Below, piece after piece: positions 26,801-60,581 of a stretch of 64,000 nucleotides of DNA. The first letter of the stretch is position 1; each line of letters opens with the position of its first letter. The position numbers and the translations under genes were made by a program. The DNA is taken from IMG/VR virus record IMGVR_UViG_3300044646_001937, positions 140,455-204,454 of that record; one strand, 5' to 3'. The notes under the pieces are model-generated. The model was not told where the DNA came from. It saw only the letters and a program-made list of their open reading frames with translations, and did no database searches.

Positions 26801-29800
26801 ACTAGGAACCTAGAGTATTCCGTAGAAGCTGGCCCACTGGCGTCAATATATGCGATCTATTTAGACCCTATAATTATCGCCACAGGTTTACCTGCAGGAT
26901 TAACCTGCCTACCTACCGGAGAAGTAGTAGGTATGGTAGACTCTTTGCTACCCGCCGGAGATTATACCGTTTCATTTAGGGCACAAAATAGATATGGAGT
27001 ATCCACCCCAGCTATTGTATGTATCGTACGAGTGGGGATTGAGCTACTTAGCCCACTACCTAACTCAATGTTAAACTTATCTGTGAATGCACAGATTACA
27101 CCAATACAAATTACAACAAGCCAGGGTGTGCCAGTAACACTTACAGTCAGGAATTTACCGGCAGGGCTAACATTTAATAATTCACAAATATACGGCACAC
27201 CGGTTACAGTCGGCAGATCTAAAATATACATAACCGCGTCGGCTGGAGTCTTCGGTATAATAAAAGCCGTCATAAACGTATCCGTGTCAATTCCCACATA
27301 TAGTCTTTCAGGTGCAGTTGTGGGTGTCGACTTAGCAGCGGCAACAAATGTTTTTTTAACCATAACCAGTGTAGAAACTGGCGCTATATACACAATAAAA
27401 ACTACAAGCACGGGCACATACCAACTTAATGGGCTGTATGCAGGGATATACAACGTATCCGCCCGTAAGGATCGATTTGAAATAGAGCCAATCACAAGAA
27501 CAATTACAATTGTAAATACGGATGTTGCATTGCAGAGTTTTTTAATTACAGGACCATACAGACTTATAGTCGGTACAGTAACCAACGCAATTAATAAAAG
27601 CGGTGTAGAGAACGTGGCGATAATTACATTTAATAGGACTGTGTACACAGATACAGCAGGCAGGTTTTTTATAAATTTATTACAGAACGAAGAAATCACA
27701 ATTACTGCGGATGCTGTTTCTTATGTGTTTAATCCAAAAACAATAGATATACCGATTAGTAATGAAGACTCAGGAGGTTATTCGTTTAAAGCCACTCCCT
27801 CGCACAATATTTCAGGAACTATAGTTTCTAAAAACATTGAAGTTCCTGCAAATATTGGAGTTCTGATAGACAATCAGAACACTGGAGAAAAATATTACGA
27901 TATAGCACCTGCAGGCAGCATTTCAGTGCAGGCACTTGACGGAAAATACAAAATATATCCTAACCCTGAAGCATCAGATTATTATAATAGTATATGGCAA
28001 TTTAAGCCAAAGTATATACCTGTAGAGGTGAATGGTCTGTCGATTCAACTAGCGAAATCGTTTAACATATTTTCAGGTAAAACAATATCAGGAAGAGTTA
28101 TTGCTCCGATATATGAAACAGAAATTGGTCTACCTATTCCTGTTGCTGGTGTGGCGATTACTGCCGCAAATATTACTCTAGATCAGACAAGGTTTATTTG
28201 GCTGAAGTTGGATGCAAACAATCCACCGACTATAAAGCTAGATCTAAAAACAATTAGAGCTGCCGCAGCATCCACTGAAAACATTCCTGTGACGGTTGAT
28301 TTTACAACAGGATTTTTTAATCTAAGAGGTACAACAGCAGGACAGCTTTCAATGGATGGATACACTGCGTCAGTAGAAGAAATAATTCTTCTGAAAGATC
28401 AATTTTATCCTGAGTTAAACGGAATATATACAATTGTAAACCCAGGCTCTGCAACAGAGACGTTCCATCTCGTCAGAAGTACTGAAGCAAACTACAATGA
28501 ATCTTTAAAAGTTGGTGCAGCAATATATGTAATTGGAGGCATCACAAACAGCGCTGCTACATATTATTTAACTACTGAAGATCAAGTTACAGCAATTTCA
28601 GATATAGATGGAAATTTCACACTGACAAACGTCTACCCAGACACTTACAACCTATACGCTCATAAAGAAGGTGTTGGTATATTAAGTATTCCTCAAGTCA
28701 ACGTATCCACGAATAATGCAACCAATCTAGTAATCGTGCCTAATACATATCAAATCACTGGCACGATACAGTATAGAGCGAATTATTTAAGCACGACGAA
28801 GACTCCGCTGACAGATGTTCGCATCAGTCTTTATAGAGCAAAAGATTTATTCTTACTTAAAAAAAGCGAGAAATCAAAAGCAGACGGCTCATGGATATTT
28901 AGATCTGTACCTGACGGAGACTATATATTGAAAGCTGAATTTAGAGGAATGACACCTACAGTAGTTGAACAAAAAATTACTGTAGATGATGGCGATGTTA
29001 ATCTGGTTGCCATGGAAGTGTATATAGCTGTTTTTACAGCACCATCCGCACCTATAGTAAATAACATACAGGGTGGTTATAGGTCACTAAAGGTGACAGT
29101 GAGCGAAAACCCAGAAGACATAGGTACAGAAATCCGCTATTACGAATATTCGCTAGACTCAGGCACAACATGGGCAACTGCAGTGAAAACTTCAGACAGC
29201 GAGATATTGATCCCCGATCTCCCTCCAGCAGAAAAAACTATCTTTAAATTAAGAGCCAGAAACTTATGGTCGTATGGACCTGAGGTTGAGCTGCAGGGTG
29301 TTGCATTTGACCGCCCTGGCGCACCTACAATTACAAGTATAGCGCGCAAAAATAAAGAGCTGTTGGTAAATTTTTCACCACCACTATTTTCAGGCGGGCT
29401 ATACATAGACAACTATGCATATTCCACAGACGGAGGTATCACTTTTTTACCTATTACTCCAGCAAACATAACTGGCTCATTTAGTATACTTAAAAGATCA
29501 AATAATGGGTTGGATTTGGTGAATGGTGAAAAATATCAAATAGTCCTTCACGCGCTAGCTGGAGAAGCTGCAGGTTTAGACTCAGAGCCGGAAATAACAT
29601 TCCCTGTAGGTACTCCTGGACCGTCGAGACTTCTGAGTGTTGTCGGCGGAAGATTGAATGAGCTAGATATAAGCTTTGAACCTCCAGAAATAACCAATGG
29701 TGCACCTGTGGCAGATTATGCATATTCTTTAAATGGAGGTCCATTTACACCATTAGGTACAGTTAACAGTCCCGCAACAATAACAAATTTACTCAACGGT

Positions 29801-48159: not shown

Positions 48160-48873
48160 ATGGCTAAATATAATATATTAAATTGGCAAAATGAAAACAG
48201 TCTATCTAATTTTCCGTTAGTTTCTTATATAGAATTTCGCGACTTTTTGGTAGATGCAAGTTTTGTACAATTCGATAATTTTATACCAATTTTAAATACT
48301 ATTGCTGTGGACGAAACTAACGTCACGCTCACCATAACTTTTGATTATGGCGTGAATAGCGGTATAGTACTATCAAAGCAAACATTTCTTCAAAATCCAA
48401 ACAGTGCATATATACGGTTGTATACCCCCACAAATGACAGATATCTTGGAGTAATTTCATTTGGCCCAGGTACATTAGATTTATTCAAAACTCACATAGG
48501 GCGCATATTAACATTAGATATGCAGTTCTCCCCAGACGCTGTGAGAAGCATCCCGCTGCAGGATGCGGTATATACATTTGACGGAATTTACGGCGATCTG
48601 GTACTTGGTAGAGGCGCTACGGACGACTCGATATTCTACAATATATCAACAGCAAAAAATACTATTGTTTTTAATGCTGTGAAATATCATGAAATAACAC
48701 CCTCTAATCAAAAACAAGGTTTGCGTAAAATTAACCTCGTACCTCCATTGGAGAATAATATCAATCTGTCTTCTAACGAGGTGATTAGGGTGACACCTGA
48801 CAGCTCAAATTCTTTACGAATATCGCTAGTGTCAGGATCACCAAGTAACGCATTTCAGATTTCTAAAGTATAA
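48160..48873 (+). CDS. Paralogue family member 4
   Basis: LNWQNENSLSNFP and KINLVPP motifs; 237 aa. Confidence 0.7.
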   Translation: MAKYNILNWQNENSLSNFPLVSYIEFRDFLVDASFVQFDNFIPILNTIAVDETNVTLTITFDYGVNSGIVLSKQTFLQNPNSAYIRLYTPTNDRYLGVISFGPGTLDLFKTHIGRILTLDMQFSPDAVRSIPLQDAVYTFDGIYGDLVLGRGATDDSIFYNISTAKNTIVFNAVKYHEITPSNQKQGLRKINLVPPLENNINLSSNEVIRVTPDSSNSLRISLVSGSPSNAFQISKV

Positions 48874-48876
48874 TTT

Positions 48877-49776
48877 ATGGAACAGGTAATTGATTGGTTA
48901 AATGAAAATGAAAATAGAGCCTACCCGCTACTTGATAACTACCCTAAAATTGGTCAAGTAGAAGGCTCGGATGTAGACATACCTGAAAACTTATTACTAG
49001 ACCTTCAGCTAATAACATCGCTAAGCCTATCTGCAACCTCAAATGTACTTTTAAAAAATATCAGCTATTCATTAACTGACAACAATTCTACTGTAACCTT
49101 TGGTACAGCCGAAAACACGATCACCGAGTTCATAATAACTGATTTTAACCAACAAACATATCCATTATATGTAAGGAATACAGATGGCTGCCTTGCTGTG
49201 TTTGGTCCAGGACTGTATACATTAAGCTTGGTGGCACCTCCAGACGCTAGTATAGTAACAAATATCCCAATAGAACCCAGCCTATGTACACAGTTTAACG
49301 ACGCTTGGTTAGGAGTAAACAAATTAAGTACATCTCCAGAAAAGGTTACAAATTTAGGCTCTTTAAATGTAACTCTCCCTCTGCAAAAAATATTGGAAAA
49401 TTCGATACACGAGCTTACTGGGGATATAACATTTGCAGAGGGTTATAACTTCTACGTAAGTATTTTTGAAAATCTAATTGACCTGGGTGTTGGTCGAGAT
49501 TATGGTTTAAAAGTGAGCTGCGATACATTTTTCCTAGATGAAGTCTACCTTGATTGTGACGAAATTGTGTCATATATAAACGGTGTGCCTCCTGACGAAA
49601 ATGGTAACTTTAAGCTTGAAGCAGGAACAAATATCTCAATTACTCCAGGTATAAATATATCTGAGACTTTTGTGGATAATTTTCTTGAAGACGCTAACGC
49701 TCATTCCCTATTCGTAGGCATGAACTTCTCAGCGGAAGATATTTGCGCTCCATTAAAATTAAGACCAAGCCGATAG
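48877..49776 (+). CDS. Paralogue family member 5
   Basis: IDWLNENENRAYP and YINGVPPDENGN motifs; 299 aa. Confidence 0.7.
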   Translation: MEQVIDWLNENENRAYPLLDNYPKIGQVEGSDVDIPENLLLDLQLITSLSLSATSNVLLKNISYSLTDNNSTVTFGTAENTITEFIITDFNQQTYPLYVRNTDGCLAVFGPGLYTLSLVAPPDASIVTNIPIEPSLCTQFNDAWLGVNKLSTSPEKVTNLGSLNVTLPLQKILENSIHELTGDITFAEGYNFYVSIFENLIDLGVGRDYGLKVSCDTFFLDEVYLDCDEIVSYINGVPPDENGNFKLEAGTNISITPGINISETFVDNFLEDANAHSLFVGMNFSAEDICAPLKLRPSR

Positions 49777-51044: not shown

Positions 51045-51325
51045 ACTATACCAAAGCTTCCTACATAATAGGACTTATTACTGTCGGTATAGTTTTTTAC
51101 ACCTTGGGTTATACCCATGGGGTAAAGAAAGCCGAGCAGGGCTGGAGACTTAGGCTTATTGCCGCAGACTTTGCGGAATACAATAAGCGCACCGGGGACT
51201 GGGAACTTCGCTCTATGGATGACGTCGTGACAAGCGGCCTCATCCTAGGGAAAGGAAAACTTCCATCACCCCCAGCAGCAGATCCCAAGATAGAACCATC
51301 ACTATTGATCCGCAATCGGAAATAG
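51041..51325 (+). CDS. Small membrane-anchored hypothetical protein
   Basis: 94 aa with an N-terminal hydrophobic helix (YIIGLITVGIVFYTLGY). Confidence 0.6.
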   Translation: MNYTKASYIIGLITVGIVFYTLGYTHGVKKAEQGWRLRLIAADFAEYNKRTGDWELRSMDDVVTSGLILGKGKLPSPPAADPKIEPSLLIRNRK

Positions 51326-51334
51326 TGGTATAAT
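51305..51334 (+). promoter_or_regulatory. Sigma-70-type promoter for tmRNA (extended -10)
   Basis: TTGATC (51305-51310), 18-nt spacer, TGgTATAAT (51326-51334), 24 nt before the mature 5' end. Confidence 0.65.
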
Positions 51335-51358: not shown

Positions 51359-51757
51359 GGGGGTGAACCGGTTTCGACTGTGTATGAGCCCCTGCAGCAG
51401 CATGTAGAGGAAGCCTGGTTGGCCTCTTAAAAAATCTAGGTAAAATAAACGCAAAGTCTGAATTTGACTTCGCCCCTTCGGTAGCAGAAGCGGATGCATT
51501 CCTCAAGGCCGCCGGCTTTGTGGATGCTGAGCTCCTCGCTGCATAAGGTACAGACTGGATGCTATTAAAAGTCTGTAAATGTTAGTAGCTGGTGCTTGAA
51601 GAAAAGAATTGCCGCTCAAGCAGAACAAATAACAATTCAAGAGAATGCGTACAGTTTGTCTTCCGACGATACGCATTCTTACAAAAGGAAGGCTAAGCAT
51701 GTAGACGCTGTAGGATAAGTATACAGGACAGGGGTTCGACTCCCCTCACCTCCACCA
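51359..51757 (+). ncRNA. ssrA: tmRNA (transfer-messenger RNA), 399 nt
   Basis: 5' GGGGGTGAACCGGTTTCGAC and 3' GGACAGGGGTTCGACTCCCCTCACCTCCACCA with encoded CCA. 7-bp acceptor stem with G3-U70. Pseudoknot 1 is AGAGG/CCTCT + CCTGG/CTAGG, helix 2 is CCTGCAGC/GCTGTAGG. Tag ORF 51451-51546 ends LLAA-TAA. Confidence 0.95.
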
Positions 51758-51784
51758 CTTTGGTGTTGGTCTGTGTTATGGTTG

Positions 51785-51821
51785 CCTCCCTCACTGTGCT
51801 GCGGCATGGTGGGGGAGGTTT
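51785..51821. terminator. GC-rich hairpin between tmRNA and the convergent - strand ORF
   Basis: CCTCCCTCACTGTGC-tgcg-GCATGGTGGGGGAGG: 15 bp with three G-U pairs, followed by TTT. Confidence 0.65.
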
Positions 51822-54836: not shown

Positions 54837-55385
54837 ATGAAGAGTAAAAAACAAATATTGAAAGATGAGAAAGCTCCTGTTCTTGTACTTATAGCCCTGA
54901 TCGCTAAAGAATATGGCGAAGAGTGTTACCACTGGGAGCCTCTTGTTTTAAAAGCAGAATTACAGGAAGATTTTGAAGTAGAGTTGTCGGACCTGCAATC
55001 AGATAAAATACAGGCAGGTATTACAATCCTGACTACAGATCAGTACGAAACAAACGTACCTGTTTTTGAAACTCTCAACTATCTGCTAAACAATCAGCCT
55101 GACGATCTGGAAGATTTTAATCCACTAGAACCTGAAGAGCTGATTTGCGGACTGACTGAAGCATATTTGATTAGAGGTGAAAAATTAGACTTTTCTCCTG
55201 AAGTTAGAGTTTATGCTGGCCTGGTCTTCCATGAATATGGTATGCATAAGCCTCCTACATTGTTTCCAGAAGCAATCATGAAAGAGCGTGAAGGAAACGA
55301 TGACTCAAAGAACGAGGCTCTGCAGGAGCTGTTTGATGAAAAAATTAAACTTATTAAGAAATACCTAGACAATGCACAGCTATAA
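54837..55385 (+). CDS. Hypothetical acidic helical protein
   Basis: ATG 54837 lies 6 nt after TATAAT (54825-54830) and avoids overlap with the upstream ORF; ~182 aa. Confidence 0.7.
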   Translation: MKSKKQILKDEKAPVLVLIALIAKEYGEECYHWEPLVLKAELQEDFEVELSDLQSDKIQAGITILTTDQYETNVPVFETLNYLLNNQPDDLEDFNPLEPEELICGLTEAYLIRGEKLDFSPEVRVYAGLVFHEYGMHKPPTLFPEAIMKEREGNDDSKNEALQELFDEKIKLIKKYLDNAQL

Positions 55386-56484
55386 TACACTTCTTGCAAA
55401 TATTTATGAAAAGCCTAACGCTAAAAGGCTAGAGCATCTGTATAACATACTTTTTGAAACCATACCCACTACAGTAACCTTTTCTGATAACTTTGAGATA
55501 GATTCTCTGAAAGCCCTCGAAGAGCACTTTGACATCTTTACAAGTGATATAACGGTGGTAGGGTCTAGGCTTGTAGAAGAAAACGTGTGGGTAGGTAAGA
55601 AGGGTACTTATAGAGATATACTGCTACATTCTTCGTATAGATCCCCTGACGGAGATCATCCTATGCTGGGTGCAGTATACGGCAACAGTGTTAAAAAAGA
55701 AGATATCGACAGTATGCACGTAAGCGTTAGAGCTGCGTGCAAAGACAGAGAAGAGGCCAAACGGTTATGCGATCTTTTGTTGCCGTTTAAACTGCAACTT
55801 AAGAATAAGATCTACATGCTTACAGCTAGTTATGGAGAGCTCAGTTTGTCTCCGCTACCCACAATGGACGTTAATAGCAATTTAGCTCTAAACTATGGTT
55901 CAGAGTTTGAAGCTTTCCATGAAAAGATTATGGATAGCCTTAAAACAAAGACATCTGGACTGTATCTGTTCAGTGGGCCTCCAGGCACAGGCAAGTCATC
56001 CTACATCAAATATCTCACAACATGCGATATTGGACGTAAGATAGTATACATCCCAGGAGGCATGATTGAGCAGCTAGTCTCTCCCGAAATGGTTCCATTG
56101 CTAGTCGAGAACAAGAATATTATTCTAGTTATCGAGGACGCTGAAAAAGCTCTAATTTCTAGAGAGGTATCAGCAAACACAGATATGGTGCAGACTGTAC
56201 TCAACCTTACGTCAGGCTTCCTTGGAGATGCTGCCAATGTATCCATCATTGCCACATTCAATACATCTAAAGATAACATTGATTCGGCACTATTGCGTAA
56301 AGGTAGGTTAAAGCTCAGCTATGAGTTTGATAAGCTTTCGCTAGATGACACTATTAAACTGGCGGAATCTCTTGGATTAAATACCTCCGGAATTACCGAA
56401 GGCATGACTCTTGCAGATATTTATCACATGGAAGAGCAACCAGGATATGAGAAGCCTGAAGAAAAGCGCGTAGGGTTCTTCTAA
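55372..56484 (+). CDS. AAA+ ATPase (single domain, BCS1-like architecture)
   Basis: Walker A GPPGTGKS, Walker B ILVIEDAE, sensor-1 IIATFN, arginine finger ALLRKGRL. Confidence 0.9.
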   Translation: MHSYNTLLANIYEKPNAKRLEHLYNILFETIPTTVTFSDNFEIDSLKALEEHFDIFTSDITVVGSRLVEENVWVGKKGTYRDILLHSSYRSPDGDHPMLGAVYGNSVKKEDIDSMHVSVRAACKDREEAKRLCDLLLPFKLQLKNKIYMLTASYGELSLSPLPTMDVNSNLALNYGSEFEAFHEKIMDSLKTKTSGLYLFSGPPGTGKSSYIKYLTTCDIGRKIVYIPGGMIEQLVSPEMVPLLVENKNIILVIEDAEKALISREVSANTDMVQTVLNLTSGFLGDAANVSIIATFNTSKDNIDSALLRKGRLKLSYEFDKLSLDDTIKLAESLGLNTSGITEGMTLADIYHMEEQPGYEKPEEKRVGFF

Positions 56485-58202
56485 CCCTCTATTGCATCTG
56501 GTCCAGCTGAAGAGCTTGGGCCAATAAGACCTGCGTCACCTACAGCCATATAGGCGGCGCAAACAGCAAACACCAGACTGTGCAGCGCATCGTCTGGTTG
56601 CTTTGGGTGGTGATCATATATCAGCTCCTGTCCAAATAGTCCATCTCTGACCTCAATGAATACATTCAATATATCCTGCATATATTCTGAAACGTCGTTC
56701 CATTGAGGAAAAACTATTTTGCCTGCCTTAAGCTGTCTGATTACAAGAGATATTACATCAGACCTATGCAAGACCCATCTATTTTGACGCCAGTCATAAG
56801 CACCAGCGTCAAAGTACTGGATAACCTTGCTGCGTCTATAGGCAGCCATTTGCGAGCGTTGAGGGCTCGTCAGCTCACAAAGCTTAATACCCCTAAAAGG
56901 GTCAGGACCACTGTCCGCGACACAGAAAGCGTTAACAGCATTAGCTCTCCTGGCAATGTCTTTAATGTGCGCCTCATGGTCGTGTCCCCTGTATATCTTA
57001 GAAAAGAATACTTCGTACACTCCATCGCCACGCATTGCCCCAAGCGTAGCTACAGTTCTAGACTGCGCCATACTCACACCCCAGTCTACACCCATAGTAT
57101 ATAGCTTATACTTGGTTTTATTCTTACTCAAAATACTGAGTTTAGTTTCATCGTTATTTTCAAACTGAGGCCCTAGAGTACATAGCTTTACAAGCTCCTC
57201 TTGCGTAATAGGTTTTGAACCTATATCGTAAGTAAGCCCAAAAGTCTCGTTCATTACAGTTTTAAGTTCATATTTACCACTATGAACTTTCTCATAAATT
57301 TCTTTCCACTCTTTAGGGTCTTCGTTGAAATGCGGAAGAATAGGCTGTGCTAGATGATAGCCGGTAATCAGATAGTCTGATGGGTTCATGCTTACCCATT
57401 CACCTATCCTGCAATCTATTCTTTTAGAGCACTTGGAGCAGCTAAGCCCATGAGGCTGCACCATCTTAAGAGGGTCGTTACCTTCTGTAAGCGAATTCCA
57501 ATGGTTGCAAGCCTCACACTTCATCATCCACTCCAGCTGATTGGAAGTCTTCCATATTCTATGTATGGTATTAGTACTATCCAGCGGAGTGCCTGCAAAA
57601 ATTTCTCGCTTATAAGGACTCATTGCCATTGTTTCCTGAATAATCGGGATTTGATCATACTGGATATCCTGAACCTCGTCGTACACCACACAGTCTACGG
57701 CAGGTCCACGAGTTCTGGTTGCATCATCCTTAACATACCTAAACAAAACACTACTATGCGTATCGTCTAATATCTTTTCAAAAACATCATTTTTAAACCA
57801 TCCTTTGACTAATAATTCTTTGATTTTAGGACTCTCAAATCTTGGGGGCAGATAGTTACTAGAGAAATATTTGGTAGTCAGCTCCTGAGGACCAACATAC
57901 ATCATTTTAAAATAATTCCACCGGATTAGGTTAAGACATATAAAATTAGATAATAAGGTAGACTTTAGCGTTTTACGACTACACTTTAAGATTAGTTTTT
58001 GAGGCATATTGTCATAGATATGCTTCAGCATCGGGAAATCCTCCAGCTTCTGGAGTCTTCCCTCATTGTCGTAGAGGTAATTCTCTACAAAGTGAGAGGG
58101 AGGTAGTACCGAAAAAATTAACTGGCGGGCAAGAAATGTGGACTTCGCATTGTTTTTGCGAAGTAATTTCTCAATAGTGTCTTTAACTAAATGGGTCGTC
58201 AT
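56481..58202 (-). CDS. terL: Terminase large subunit (GpA-like, with Zn-binding insert)
   Basis: ATPase motifs KCSRKTLKST, RGPAVDCVVYDEVQD and AGTP; CEAC...CSKC Zn ribbon; nuclease MGVDWG, ADSG and PDDALHS. ATG 58202 is preferred over TTG 58223. Confidence 0.88.
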   Translation of the reverse strand: MTTHLVKDTIEKLLRKNNAKSTFLARQLIFSVLPPSHFVENYLYDNEGRLQKLEDFPMLKHIYDNMPQKLILKCSRKTLKSTLLSNFICLNLIRWNYFKMMYVGPQELTTKYFSSNYLPPRFESPKIKELLVKGWFKNDVFEKILDDTHSSVLFRYVKDDATRTRGPAVDCVVYDEVQDIQYDQIPIIQETMAMSPYKREIFAGTPLDSTNTIHRIWKTSNQLEWMMKCEACNHWNSLTEGNDPLKMVQPHGLSCSKCSKRIDCRIGEWVSMNPSDYLITGYHLAQPILPHFNEDPKEWKEIYEKVHSGKYELKTVMNETFGLTYDIGSKPITQEELVKLCTLGPQFENNDETKLSILSKNKTKYKLYTMGVDWGVSMAQSRTVATLGAMRGDGVYEVFFSKIYRGHDHEAHIKDIARRANAVNAFCVADSGPDPFRGIKLCELTSPQRSQMAAYRRSKVIQYFDAGAYDWRQNRWVLHRSDVISLVIRQLKAGKIVFPQWNDVSEYMQDILNVFIEVRDGLFGQELIYDHHPKQPDDALHSLVFAVCAAYMAVGDAGLIGPSSSAGPDAIEG

Positions 58203-58383
58203 AACCAAAAAACCAAACAGCAACAGAATAAAAAAAGAATAGAAAATACATCCGTTGATCTATATAACTTTTTTGATACCTCCTTTGCCACTATGATAAG
58301 TATCTTCAGTGGCAAGCCTCCTGGCAATAAAAAACATTATAGGGTCTACAAAAAATAATAACTATGCTATAATAGTTGTTATT

Positions 58384-58542: not shown

Positions 58543-58993
58543 TGTTGCGTCTGAACCTGTAGCCCGTAAACGGGGAAGGCCCAAAGGGGCCAAGAACAAA
58601 CCTAAGCAGCCTATAGCTCATACTGAGCCTGTAGCTGTTGAGGTTCGTAAGAGAGGCAGACCAAAGGGAGCCAAGAATAAGCCTAAGGCTATTGCTCCTG
58701 CTATGGTGATAAAGGTTAAAGCTAAACCTGCACCTGAGGAGATTAGGGTAAATAAGAAAGTTGAGCAGGTGGATGAGCATCCACTTTTTGCTGCAGTCAA
58801 ATGGCTGGAGAAGCATATGCATCCTTCCCAGTCGGCATATTACGCCAAACGAGCCGCTAGAGCGGGCGCAACGTTGCATAACGCAATGCTTGCCGACATC
58901 CTTGGATTCTTCAACGTCCAGGAAACAAACATACTTAAACAAGTAAAAAAGAATAACTTCATAGCAACATTCGCAGACAATGAACTTCATTAA
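58493..58993 (+). CDS. AT-hook DNA-binding protein
   Basis: Two identical RKRGRPKGAKNKPK motifs (58565-58606, 58646-58687) and a helical C-terminal domain. Confidence 0.72.
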   Translation: MIEKSKRRGYKKKTKIDVASEPVARKRGRPKGAKNKPKQPIAHTEPVAVEVRKRGRPKGAKNKPKAIAPAMVIKVKAKPAPEEIRVNKKVEQVDEHPLFAAVKWLEKHMHPSQSAYYAKRAARAGATLHNAMLADILGFFNVQETNILKQVKKNNFIATFADNELH

Positions 58994-60581
58994 CAAACTA
59001 GCAAAATATAGGGAAGCATCGTATCCGGCGGTATTCGTACTTACTCACGAGGAGTCCAGACTTTGTGGTGAGATTATGCATATACCTCCAGCAGATGAGA
59101 AAAGCCCTGAAGTTACAGTGCATGAGTGGGATGCTCAAAAGGGTCTTGTATATAAAAAGGGACCTAATAAAATAAAACACCCCGGCGATACTGTGGAAAG
59201 CACTACAGCGCTGGAATATATACAGAGTTTTAACGCAGCAGATAATATTTTTATACTGAAAGATTTTACTCCATTTCTGGATAGGCCATTAAACGTCCGT
59301 CTTTTAAGAAACAGCTGGAATATCCTTAAAGCTAATCGAAATATGATCGTTTTCAGTGGTCATAAATTTGCTGTGCCTGGAGAGCTTCAAAAAGAGATAC
59401 AGCTACTAGATTATACACTGCCTGATAACAAGGCTATCTCAGAGCGTCTCACATATATCTTGGATTCTGTGAATAAAGCCCGAAATGAATTGGATAAGCC
59501 GCCGCTTGATGTAGATAAAGATATCTTTGAGTCTGCTGTGGAGGCAGCCAAAGGTATGACCTATATGGAGGTCGAGAACGCCTATTCTATGGGCTGGCAG
59601 TCAGTCAAAAAGATTAACGATAAATTCGTAGATGTTGTGTTTCATGAAAAGATTGCGCAGCTTAAGAAAAATGGGCTGCTTACATACATGGAACCTAACA
59701 TCGACTTCAGTAACGTTGGCGGTTTGCATGGATTAAAAACGTGGCTAAATACACGCAAGGACGCTTATTCCGAGGAAGCTCGCCAATACAAGCTACCTCT
59801 TCCAAAGGGTATGCTTCTGGCCAGTGTTCCAGGTACTGGCAAGTCATTGATATGTAAAGCAGTTGCAAAAGAGTTTAAGTGTCCTCTGTTTGCACTAGAC
59901 CTGTCCAAGGTGTTTGACTCGCTTGTAGGTAACAGCGAGAAAAACATGGGTGAGGTAATCAAGACGATTAACGCTGTAGGTAAATGTGTAATCCTGATCG
60001 ACGAGATCGAGAAAAGCTTTAGTAACAGCGCAGTCAGCGGTTCTGGAGATAGTGGTGTCAGTAGCCGCATCTTTGGCACTTTCCTTACATGGCTAAACGA
60101 CCGTGATAACCCAGCGTTCATTGTGGCCACAACAAATAATCACACACTGCTTCCGGCTGCACTTATTCGTAAGGGCCGTTTCGATCAACTGTTCTGGCTA
60201 GATTTGCCTACAGCAGACGAGAGGAAGGAGATCTTTAATGTGGTTATTGCAAAGTATGGGCGAGATCCTAAGAACTTTGCTATCAAAACACTGGTTGCTG
60301 GCGCTGATAATTTCACAGGTGCTGAGATAGAGGAGGTATTCAAAGATGCATTATATAAAGCGTATCACGCTAAAGAAGAAGTGGCAGATACTCATGTTTT
60401 AGAGGTACTATCGGAATTTATTCCTTTCGCAGTATCCCACGAGCATGACCTGAAGACTATGCGAAAGCAGGCTCAGGGTAAACTTGTAATGGTTACAACT
60501 AAAGGTGATCCTGTAGCTGACGTACAGAAAAACATGCGCAAGTTAAGCATTGCAATTGGCGGCGAAGAAACTGAAGACTAA
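58980..60581 (+). CDS. Ycf46-like AAA+ ATPase
   Basis: 533 aa. The degenerate N-terminal AAA-like domain (YPAVFVLTHEESR...FILKDF) precedes DVGG-like NVGGLHGLKTWL, Walker A SVPGTGKS, Walker B LIDEIEK and RKGRFD. Confidence 0.85.
   Translation: MNFINKLAKYREASYPAVFVLTHEESRLCGEIMHIPPADEKSPEVTVHEWDAQKGLVYKKGPNKIKHPGDTVESTTALEYIQSFNAADNIFILKDFTPFLDRPLNVRLLRNSWNILKANRNMIVFSGHKFAVPGELQKEIQLLDYTLPDNKAISERLTYILDSVNKARNELDKPPLDVDKDIFESAVEAAKGMTYMEVENAYSMGWQSVKKINDKFVDVVFHEKIAQLKKNGLLTYMEPNIDFSNVGGLHGLKTWLNTRKDAYSEEARQYKLPLPKGMLLASVPGTGKSLICKAVAKEFKCPLFALDLSKVFDSLVGNSEKNMGEVIKTINAVGKCVILIDEIEKSFSNSAVSGSGDSGVSSRIFGTFLTWLNDRDNPAFIVATTNNHTLLPAALIRKGRFDQLFWLDLPTADERKEIFNVVIAKYGRDPKNFAIKTLVAGADNFTGAEIEEVFKDALYKAYHAKEEVADTHVLEVLSEFIPFAVSHEHDLKTMRKQAQGKLVMVTTKGDPVADVQKNMRKLSIAIGGEETED

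What the first reader, a model, noticed from the sequence alone, without database searches (positions are those of the whole stretch)
51359..51757. Intact phage tmRNA with an unusually long 31-codon degradation tag
Seen: the resume codon GCA at 51451 has U at -5 and A at -4, as in E. coli U85/A86. The tag reads (A)AKSEFDFAPSVAEADAFLKAAGFVDAELLAA*. Established: the E. coli tag is 11 aa (AANDENYALAA) and the terminal LAA is the ClpXP degron; phage tmRNAs are known but poorly characterised. Inference: the ~20 extra residues, with a possible amphipathic helix SVAEADAFLKAAG, may reroute tagged proteins to another protease or adaptor, or reflect the host tag. No SmpB gene is in the window.
Basis: partly seen in the sequence, partly recalled or inferred. 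Interest (0 to 1): 0.75.

Follow-up and report, generated by a model that had tools for sequence, protein, structure and literature searches.

The report
Jumbo-phage tmRNA with conserved 31-codon tag
A 204-kb freshwater jumbo phage carries an intact, expressed ribosome-rescue RNA (tmRNA) whose tag is about three times the usual length and is conserved as a peptide across related phages, so the extra residues probably do something, though what is not known.

Summary
ARAGORN and Rfam RF00023 (148 bits, full length) place a one-piece tmRNA at 51359-51757 (+). The resume codon GCA is at 51451, with U at -5 and A at -4. It encodes 31 sense codons, ends in LLAA, and stops at TAA. The window belongs to a complete 204,454-bp virus record with terminal repeats. 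That genome has 7 tRNAs and no SmpB, ClpP, Lon, ClpX-type ATPase, ArfB or integrase.

New evidence:
- Seven related phage contigs carry the same tmRNA and tag.
- 19 of 26 variable tag sites are third codon positions, and pN/pS is 0.04-0.6. The whole tag, extension included, is therefore translated and under purifying selection.
- The extension coincides with a conserved 26-bp RNA hairpin.
- Freshwater metatranscriptomes hold contigs that cover the tmRNA, and in three of the four runs laid nothing beside it.
- The tag core was found on no bacterial contig.

Long tags are not unique to this phage. Mycobacteriophage Bxz1 has 25 codons, and other viral-contig tmRNAs have 18-27.

Verdict: this is a real and extreme variant of a known kind, the phage-encoded tmRNA. 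The role of the extension and the host remain unknown. Interest is moderate.

The parts
51305..51334 (+). Sigma-70-type promoter: TTGATC, 18-nt spacer, TG-extended TATAAT. It would start transcription about 17 nt before the mature 5' end.
   Evidence: scores it 10 of 12 with a TG extension. The TGGTATAAT box is conserved in the four relatives that carry the tmRNA at this locus (window, L005, L003, L008). It is absent in L018/L019, where the tmRNA heads a tRNA array.
51359..51757 (+). One-piece tmRNA gene, 399 nt.
   Evidence: ARAGORN. Rfam RF00023 at 148.4 bits, full length. RNAalifold on 7 homologues gives 106 pairs, 16 of them with compensatory changes. Metatranscriptome contigs cover 51385-51755 and 51368-51555.
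51359..51385 (+). 5' half of the tRNA-like domain: acceptor strand GGGGGUG (51359-51365), D-loop analogue with UUCGAC, and the 5' strand of helix 2a.
   Evidence: ARAGORN domain map. The acceptor pairs, including G3:U70, are invariant in all 7 sequences.
51408..51441 (+). Pseudoknot 1: hairpin 51408-51428, whose loop (GCCUGG) pairs with CUAGGU at 51436-51441.
   Evidence: Read directly. The loop/downstream pairs are window GCCUGG/CUAGGU, L005 GUCUGG/CCAGGC and L003 CCUGAU/AUCAGG, so the changes are compensatory. The T>C variant at 51437 in all four RNA-seq runs turns a G-U pair into G-C.
51446..51450 (+). Resume-codon context UAAAC (positions -5 to -1).
   Evidence: A at -4 is present in all 7 family members. 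U at -5 is present in 6 of 7; L005 has A.
51451..51546 (+). Tag reading frame: 31 sense codons plus TAA.
   Evidence: Variable sites fall 4/3/19 on codon positions 1/2/3 (binomial P = 4e-5). Pairwise pN/pS is 0.04-0.6 where defined. The only indel in the family is exactly one codon.
51475..51548 (+). A 26-bp imperfect hairpin that covers codons 9-31 and the stop codon. This is the part that makes the tag long, and it looks like an in-frame insertion into an ordinary tag.
   Evidence: 97.8% of cells are paired, against 46% or less when the partners are slid, and 2 pairs show compensatory changes. The 83-nt stretch 51470-51552 folds at -34.2 kcal/mol with z = -2.4; the whole tag region gives z = -2.9. 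GC is 59.5% against 45% for the rest of the tmRNA, and the sequence is not repeated elsewhere in the genome.
51549..51577 (+). Helix 5 hairpin, placed directly after the stop codon.
   Evidence: Rfam alignment. RNAalifold finds 8 pairs, one with a compensatory change.
51580..51680 (+). Pseudoknot domain: the PK2 region (51580-51634) and a long PK4-type hairpin (51641-51680).
   Evidence: Rfam alignment. The hairpin at alignment columns 285-324 has 5 pairs with compensatory changes.
51697..51757 (+). 3' half of the tRNA-like domain: helix 2 return strands, T-arm (51730-51746), acceptor strand CACCUCC (51747-51753) and ACCA (51754-51757).
   Evidence: The last 26 nt before the CCA are identical in more than 120 bacterial species from many phyla.
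51785..51818 (+). A 10-bp GC-rich hairpin followed by UUU. It may be a terminator or a processing signal (low confidence).
   Evidence: Read directly. It is conserved only in the close relative L005 and was not called by the terminator scan, which needs 5 T.

Best explanation
This is a functional, phage-encoded one-piece tmRNA of an uncultured freshwater jumbo phage.

Shown:
- All RNA elements needed for trans-translation are intact and evolve with compensatory changes.
- The gene has its own conserved extended -10 promoter.
- The RNA is present in freshwater metatranscriptomes. In three of the four runs laid, only the tmRNA is covered.
- The 31-codon frame evolves like a protein-coding sequence.

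Inferred:
- After processing, host AlaRS charges the RNA through G3:U70.
- Host SmpB and EF-Tu deliver it to ribosomes stalled on broken mRNAs in the infected cell, and translation resumes at GCA 51451.
- The nascent chain receives a 32-residue tag. Its C-terminal LLAA hands the chain to host ClpXP/ClpAP-type proteases, because the phage encodes none.
- The roughly 20 extra residues look like an in-frame, hairpin-forming insertion into an ordinary tag of the type AESFDYA...LAA.
- Because they are conserved as a peptide, including a predicted helix VAEADAFLKAA, they most likely add a second recognition determinant. This could be an adaptor site, or a long hydrophobic/aromatic stretch that lets Lon- or FtsH-type proteases engage.
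- The hairpin additionally shapes or protects the mRNA-like domain.
For: - Gene and structure.
- PK1 covariation.
- Promoter.
- Expression: one run has a 371-nt contig covering 51385-51755 with a single mismatch and zero depth on both flanks. Partial tmRNA contigs occur in three further runs from other studies. Eight RNA runs hold at least 20% of the tmRNA's sampled words.
- Translation and selection: variable sites fall 4/3/19 by codon position (P = 4e-5). pN/pS is 0.04-0.35 in extension codons 8-26. The third-position excess holds separately in paired sites (8/13 vs 2/35, P = 1e-4) and unpaired sites (11/18 vs 5/27, P = 0.0045).
- Retention in the lineage: the tmRNA is kept in phages whose flanking proteins are only 40-90% identical, and even after it moved to another locus.
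- Dependence on the host: the phage has no SmpB, ClpP, Lon, AAA_2 or RF-1/ArfB, and neither does the related complete 198-kb phage have SmpB.
- Helix prediction.
- Precedent that long tags go with Lon: Mollicutes (PMC9382460).
Against: - No experiment shows charging, tagging or degradation.
- The host is unknown, so its SmpB, proteases and own tag cannot be compared.
- No partner for the extension was found: nothing in PDB, in the Atlas or elsewhere in the phage genome.
- Part of the conservation could come from the RNA hairpin, which has 2 compensatory pairs.
- RNA-seq contigs are unstranded, and DNA carry-over cannot be formally excluded. One of the four runs laid also had contigs in both flanks.
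- The selection test rests on only 7 sequences, 6 of them distinct in the tag, and these are related to each other.
Confidence: 0.7

Rival explanations
1. The tag simply mirrors the host's own ssrA tag. On this view the phage recently captured the host gene, and nothing about the tag is phage-specific.
For: Phage tmRNAs are generally thought to derive from host lineages (PMC9004378). The 3' 26-mer is identical to that of many bacteria. The host is unidentified, so its tag is unseen. The tag and hairpin have higher GC (57-60%) than the phage (40.6%).
Against: A degenerate search for the 9-residue tag core found only the phage family: 6 IMG/VR contigs and 1 of 241 million JGI metagenome records. 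All 78 bacterial tmRNAs sharing the 3' end have ordinary tags. The RNA body is only about 60-79% like the best of them. The gene is old within the phage lineage, where flanking proteins have diverged to 40% identity and the gene has been relocated. ARAGORN's own tag list does not hold it. The genome-contig scan was for the 3' end only and was cut at 120 rows, so absence from all bacteria is not proven.
Confidence: 0.1
2. The extension is kept mainly for the RNA. The long hairpin stabilises the RNA, hides the frame from premature ribosome entry or tunes the resume step, and the peptide is a by-product.
For: The 26-bp hairpin has 97.8% of cells paired and two compensatory pairs. One of those couples a K-to-E change to a synonymous change. 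The fold has z = -2.4 to -2.9.
Against: Third-codon-position excess persists in both paired and unpaired sites, which RNA constraint alone does not predict. Residues in loops and bulges are also invariant. Most other long-tag phage tmRNAs show no unusually stable fold. The two readings are not exclusive.
Confidence: 0.15
3. It acts as a decoy that soaks up host SmpB or competes with host tmRNA to shut down host quality control, rather than as a tagging RNA.
For: There is no phage SmpB. A phage carrying only the tRNA-like domain (DS6A) is known, and such molecules inhibit tmRNA (PMC4131195).
Against: A decoy needs no reading frame. Here the frame, the resume context, PK1 and the stop codon are all conserved, and the frame shows coding-type selection.
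Confidence: 0.05
4. Translation resumes at a later in-frame codon, so the real tag is shorter.
For: Codons 2-7 are the least conserved part. U at -5 is replaced by A in L005.
Against: ARAGORN and the Rfam alignment agree on 51451. A at -4 is invariant. Codons 1 and 3 vary only synonymously, and the sole indel is exactly one codon at position 4. N-terminal tag residues are the variable part in bacteria too (established knowledge).
Confidence: 0.05

Closest known systems
Mycobacteriophage Bxz1 (cluster C) tmRNA
   Same: It is phage-encoded and one-piece, sits among tRNA genes, has no phage SmpB reported, and has a long tag of 25 codons. Both tags hold an acidic, aromatic helical core: AEIEAFF in Bxz1 and AEADAFL here.
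   Different: There is no detectable nucleotide similarity (blastn against 50,697 phage records found nothing). The hosts and habitats differ. The Bxz1 tag ends ALV rather than LAA, is 6 codons shorter, and its tag region shows no unusually stable fold (z = -0.5). The motif likeness may be chance in Ala/Glu-rich peptides.
Escherichia coli SsrA (canonical tmRNA, tag AANDENYALAA)
   Same: It has the same architecture: a tRNA-like domain with G3:U70, PK1, a GCA resume codon with U at -5 and A at -4, and a C-terminal LAA degron.
   Different: The tag has 31 codons rather than 10. The stop codon lies in the closing stem of a large hairpin and not in the loop of helix 5. The N-terminal part has no SspB-type AANDENY site. 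The gene is on a virus without smpB.
Mollicute (Mycoplasma/Mesoplasma) ssrA tags
   Same: These are long tags. The extra length goes with recognition by a protease other than ClpXP, namely Lon (PMC9382460).
   Different: Mollicute tags end in YAFA and belong to cells that lack ClpXP. This tag keeps LAA, and its host's protease set is unknown.
tmRNAs of huge phages and marine myophages (Al-Shayeb 2020; Melnitz and pelagiphages)
   Same: tmRNA is a recurrent accessory translation gene of large phages. About 2.3% of sequenced phages carry one (PMC7162821, PMC9004378).
   Different: Some huge phages also carry SmpB, and this one does not. The marine ones are two-piece with ordinary-length tags and sometimes a glutamine riboswitch. 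This one is one-piece and has a promoter of its own.

Membership tests
tmRNA (Rfam RF00023, one-piece) | Covariance-model score above the gathering threshold over the full model | tested here: met
   148.4 bits against 47, model positions 1-374 of 374. The whole-genome search gives the same result.
tmRNA (Rfam RF00023, one-piece) | tRNA-Ala-like acceptor: 7-bp stem with G3:U70, A discriminator, CCA end, T-arm | tested here: met
   ARAGORN domain map. All acceptor pairs are invariant in 7 homologues.
tmRNA (Rfam RF00023, one-piece) | Pseudoknot 1 just upstream of the resume codon | tested here: met
   Hairpin 51408-51428 plus loop-to-downstream pairing with compensatory changes in L005 and L003, read directly.
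tmRNA (Rfam RF00023, one-piece) | Short open frame that starts at an Ala or Gly resume codon, with A at -4, and ends in a hydrophobic C-terminus and a stop | tested here: met
   GCA at 51451, A at -4 in 7 of 7, tag ends LLAA then TAA. Coding-type selection is shown. The length (31 codons) is atypical.
tmRNA (Rfam RF00023, one-piece) | Expressed as a stable small RNA | tested here: met
   Contigs cover the tmRNA in four metatranscriptomes. In X15 one contig spans 51385-51755 with no depth on either flank, and word share reaches 0.89. Caveats: the contigs are unstranded, DNA carry-over is not formally excluded, and X16 also had contigs in both flanks.
tmRNA (Rfam RF00023, one-piece) | Works with SmpB; is charged by AlaRS; tags proteins | not testable with these tools
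   No SmpB is found in this phage or in the complete 198-kb relative, so the host must supply it. The host is unknown and there is no biochemistry.
ClpXP-type ssrA degron | C-terminal Leu-Ala-Ala with a free carboxylate | tested here: met
   The tag ends ELLAA in all 7 family members. Recognition itself was not tested.
Mollicute-type Lon-directed ssrA tag | Long tag ending in the (N)YAFA motif, in a cell without ClpXP | tested here: not met
   The C-terminus is LLAA. The host's proteases are unknown. Only the length is shared (PMC9382460).
Bxz1-type mycobacteriophage tmRNA lineage | Sequence homology of the RNA | tested here: not met
   blastn with word size 11 against 50,697 phage records found no match. 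Only the design is shared: a long tag, and a position among tRNA genes in the relatives L016/L018/L019.
Prophage att-site fragment of host ssrA | Only the 3' part of ssrA, next to an integrase | tested here: not met
   The gene is full length, there is no tyrosine integrase in the genome, and the genome has terminal repeats.

The most novel reading that the evidence does not exclude
Extended tags may be a phage-specific adaptation rather than a curiosity. On this reading, phage-borne tmRNAs (this family, Bxz1 and several IMG/VR lineages) have repeatedly grown a conserved helical insert in the tag. That insert would give proteins tagged in infected cells a fate different from host-tagged ones. 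It could deliver them to a different protease or adaptor, or mark or sequester them. It could even add a working C-terminal module to particular phage products made from non-stop messages. In this family the insert would do double duty as a structured RNA element.
Probability: 0.2. Interest if true: 0.75.

Novelty: new variant of a known kind. Interest (0 to 1): 0.45.

Why it matters
What phage tmRNAs do is an open question with almost no experimental work. A full-text search found only a handful of papers that discuss them.

This family gives a clean handle on that question. It is an expressed tmRNA whose oversized tag is demonstrably read and selected as a peptide, in a phage that must borrow SmpB and proteases from its host.

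If the extension changes the fate of tagged proteins, it would show that phages reprogram bacterial protein quality control, not merely top it up. It could also supply an orthogonal degradation tag for synthetic biology, as the Mesoplasma tag did.

If the extension has no effect, the case is still a useful example of a sequence under double constraint, from both peptide and RNA hairpin.

Tried and rejected
- **Host identification failed.** The 3'-end 26-mer hit more than 120 bacterial species across Verrucomicrobiota, Fibrobacterota, Clostridia, Actinomycetota, Lentisphaerota and others. Full-length comparison gave no close relative, at about 0.6-0.79 identity in the conserved parts. The terminase is only 30.6% identical to the nearest isolated phage, Salmonella phage Arash. 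The neighbouring genes are orphans in PHROGs and Pfam. An exact-protein look-up of the terminase found nothing.
- **No look-alike for the tag peptide.** The PDB search found none at E up to 10. The protein Atlas gave only weak hits to unnamed peptides. The phage's own six-frame translation held nothing similar.
- **Phage-encoded partner rejected.** The genome has no ClpP, Lon, ClpX/ClpA-type ATPase, ArfB or SmpB. The AAA ATPase 3.6 kb downstream (55372-56484) is not linked to the tmRNA in relatives where the tmRNA sits elsewhere, so I did not pursue it.
- **Repeated mobile element rejected.** The hairpin has no other copy in the genome.
- **Translated hairpin as a general feature of long-tag phage tmRNAs rejected.** Only this family and L194 fold unusually well.
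- **FtsZ C-terminal peptide mimicry (DAFLK against PAFLR) considered and dropped.** The Lys is Glu in half of the family.
- **Calls that failed on format:** The search for related loci with the 31-residue tag (too short), a degenerate 5' pattern with 13 plain bases, and a phylum-wide search centred on a locus.
- **Complex prediction not used.** No justified partner was available.

Full report
**Observation.** Rfam's tmRNA model matches the same coordinates end to end at 148.4 bits, against a threshold of 47. Reading the sequence confirms several points:
- GCA is at 51451, with T at -5 (51446) and A at -4 (51447).
- There are 31 sense codons and a TAA stop at 51544-51546.
- The acceptor stem is GGGGGUG/CACCUCC, with the G3:U70 pair that AlaRS needs, an A discriminator and an encoded CCA.

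**Where it lies.** The window is the last 64 kb of a 204,454-bp IMG/VR virus record. The record has direct terminal repeats and is rated complete. GC content is 40.6%.
- The genome has seven tRNAs in two clusters and this one tmRNA.
- It has a large terminase at 56481-58223 (-).
- It has no tyrosine integrase.
- The terminase is only 30.6% identical to that of the nearest isolated phage, and most neighbouring genes are orphans.
- The DNA is found in lake and other freshwater metagenomes from many studies.

This is a novel freshwater jumbo phage, probably virulent. Its host is unknown.

**A family.** Pattern scans of IMG/VR found six further contigs, and a JGI metagenome scan found one more, all with a homologous tmRNA.
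- L005 and L141 are close relatives, with 90-97% protein identity in the flanks.
- L003 is collinear but diverged, at 40-88% identity.
- L008 carries the same tag as L003.
- In L016, L018 (a complete 198-kb genome) and L019, the tmRNA sits directly before the tRNA-Met/Tyr/Thr/Asn array. In my phage that region corresponds to 25-34 kb of the genome.

The gene has therefore moved within the lineage, yet it has been kept with its long tag of 30 or 31 codons. The seven RNAs align at 90% mean column identity. RNAalifold gives 106 pairs, 16 of them with compensatory changes. Pseudoknot 1 also covaries (window GCCUGG/CUAGGU, L005 GUCUGG/CCAGGC, L003 CCUGAU/AUCAGG).

**Is the long frame really read?** Of 26 variable sites in the tag, 4, 3 and 19 fall on codon positions 1, 2 and 3 (P = 4e-5). 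Where defined, pairwise pN/pS is 0.04-0.6 overall and 0.04-0.35 within extension codons 8-26. The single indel is exactly one codon. A at -4 is invariant. This supports resumption at 51451 and shows that the whole tag, extension included, is under purifying selection as a peptide.

**A second constraint.** Codons 9-31 and the stop codon form a 26-bp imperfect hairpin at 51475-51548.
- 97.8% of cells are paired, against 46% or less when the partners are slid.
- Two pairs show compensatory change. One of them couples the K19E replacement to a synonymous change in codon 23.
- The fold is more stable than shuffled sequence, at z = -2.4 to -2.9.
- The third-position excess holds separately in paired sites (P = 1e-4) and unpaired sites (P = 0.0045), so RNA structure does not explain the peptide conservation.
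- The hairpin is GC-rich (59.5%) and is not a repeat in the genome.

The tag reads like an ordinary one (AESFDYA...LAA) split by an in-frame insertion of about 20 codons. That is my inference.

**Expression.** A promoter with an extended -10 box lies at 51305-51334. It is conserved in the four relatives that share this locus. I laid four freshwater metatranscriptomes from four studies on 1.6 kb around the gene:
- One run has a 371-nt contig at 51385-51755 with a single mismatch and no depth on either flank.
- The other three have partial tmRNA contigs.
- In one of them (X16) contigs also fall in both flanks. X18 has one in the far upstream flank only.

Eight RNA runs hold at least 20% of the tmRNA's sampled words, and the highest share is 0.89. 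The contigs are unstranded and DNA carry-over cannot be fully excluded. Even so, coverage confined to the gene argues for a stable RNA.

**What it depends on.** The phage encodes no SmpB, ClpP, Lon, ClpX/ClpA-type ATPase or ArfB. The complete relative has no SmpB either. Charging, delivery and proteolysis must therefore use host factors. These steps are inferred and not shown.

**Is it the host's tag?** A degenerate search for the nine-residue core found only the phage family, both in IMG/VR and in 241 million JGI metagenome records. The 3' end of the RNA is shared with more than 120 bacterial species from many phyla. All 78 tmRNAs called in those loci have ordinary tags, apart from one oddity described below. 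None is close in the rest of the RNA. ARAGORN does not know the tag. A host copy is not excluded, because the host is unknown, but it is unlikely.

**How unusual is it?** Phage tmRNAs are known. About 2.3% of sequenced phages carry one (PMC9004378). Huge phages also have them (PMC7162821), as do the cluster C mycobacteriophages and phage G (PMC4131195). I confirmed that Bxz1 encodes a 25-codon tag.

In a sample of tmRNAs on IMG/VR contigs, 8 of 39 unique one-piece tags have 18-27 residues, against 2 of 37 in the bacterial sample (Fisher P = 0.05; rank test P = 3e-4). These long-tag RNAs are full-length Rfam matches, and several lie in tRNA arrays.

Long tags therefore recur on phage-borne tmRNAs. 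This one is the longest I saw, and it is the only one I tested for selection. Apart from L194, the others lack an unusually stable tag fold.

**Mechanism.** The best reading is a working rescue RNA that adds a 32-residue tag ending in the ClpXP-type LAA. The conserved extension holds a predicted helix at residues 11-21 and is rich in Phe, Leu and Val. It most plausibly serves as an extra recognition element. Mollicute tags are a precedent, since their length goes with Lon recognition (PMC9382460). I found no partner, so this part remains a hypothesis. The rivals are a host-derived tag, an RNA-only role for the hairpin, an SmpB decoy and a later resume codon. Each is weighed in its own section.

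**Verdict.** It is a new and extreme variant of a known kind. Its main value is as a well-supported test case for what phage tmRNAs and their long tags do.

Noticed in passing
L147:1501-1935 (Bxz1); L283, L260, L293, L194, L298/L314, L301, L330, L231 (IMG/VR): Long tags of 18-27 codons recur on tmRNAs carried by viral contigs, several of them inside tRNA arrays (16 tRNAs in L298). Some share an acidic, aromatic helical core with this tag: Bxz1 has AEIEAFF and this tag has AEADAFL. All are full-length Rfam tmRNA matches.
   Followed up: partly
L070:1135-1537 (-): A 168-kb contig binned as a Thermoplasmatales archaeon carries a full tmRNA (155.8 bits) with a 30-codon tag. Archaea have no tmRNA, so the contig is probably a misbinned phage or bacterial contig. 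Pfam on five neighbouring ORFs gave only a ThiF-family hit.
   Followed up: partly
G000 28.9 kb against window 51359-51757; L016, L018, L019: The tmRNA occupies two different loci within this phage lineage. In L016/L018/L019 it lies directly upstream of the tRNA-Met/Tyr/Thr/Asn array. In this phage, L005, L003 and L008 it lies on its own with its own promoter, about 12 kb from the right genome end.
   Followed up: partly
window 51511-51513 and 51437: RNA-seq contigs from two runs carry AGT in place of GCC. This is the Ala21-to-Ser allele, the same as in L005/L003, and it falls at the least conserved tag residue. All four runs carry T>C at 51437, which turns a G-U pair of pseudoknot 1 into G-C. 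This is natural population variation.
   Followed up: no
window 23810-46788 (+): Three consecutive giant ORFs of 2237, 1773 and 3616 aa lie just upstream of the tmRNA region. I did not characterise them. Eight other large ORFs in the window had no PHROG match.
   Followed up: no
window 55372-56484 (+) and 58980-60581 (+): Two AAA-family ATPase genes flank the oppositely oriented large terminase gene (56481-58223). The first matches Pfam AAA (PF00004) and the second matches phrog_8638 at 1e-115. Their functions are unknown.
   Followed up: no
window 51732-51757: The last 26 nt of the tmRNA before the CCA are identical in more than 120 bacterial species from at least six phyla. Very high RNA-seq depth over 51718-51771 therefore comes from other organisms' tmRNAs and says nothing about this phage.
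   Followed up: yes
G000 28956-29383 and 48702-48985 (genome coordinates): The phage tRNAs read A/U-ending codons (Leu-UAA, Arg-UCU and Thr-UGU anticodons). This hints at a host with higher GC than the phage's 40.6%.
   Followed up: no
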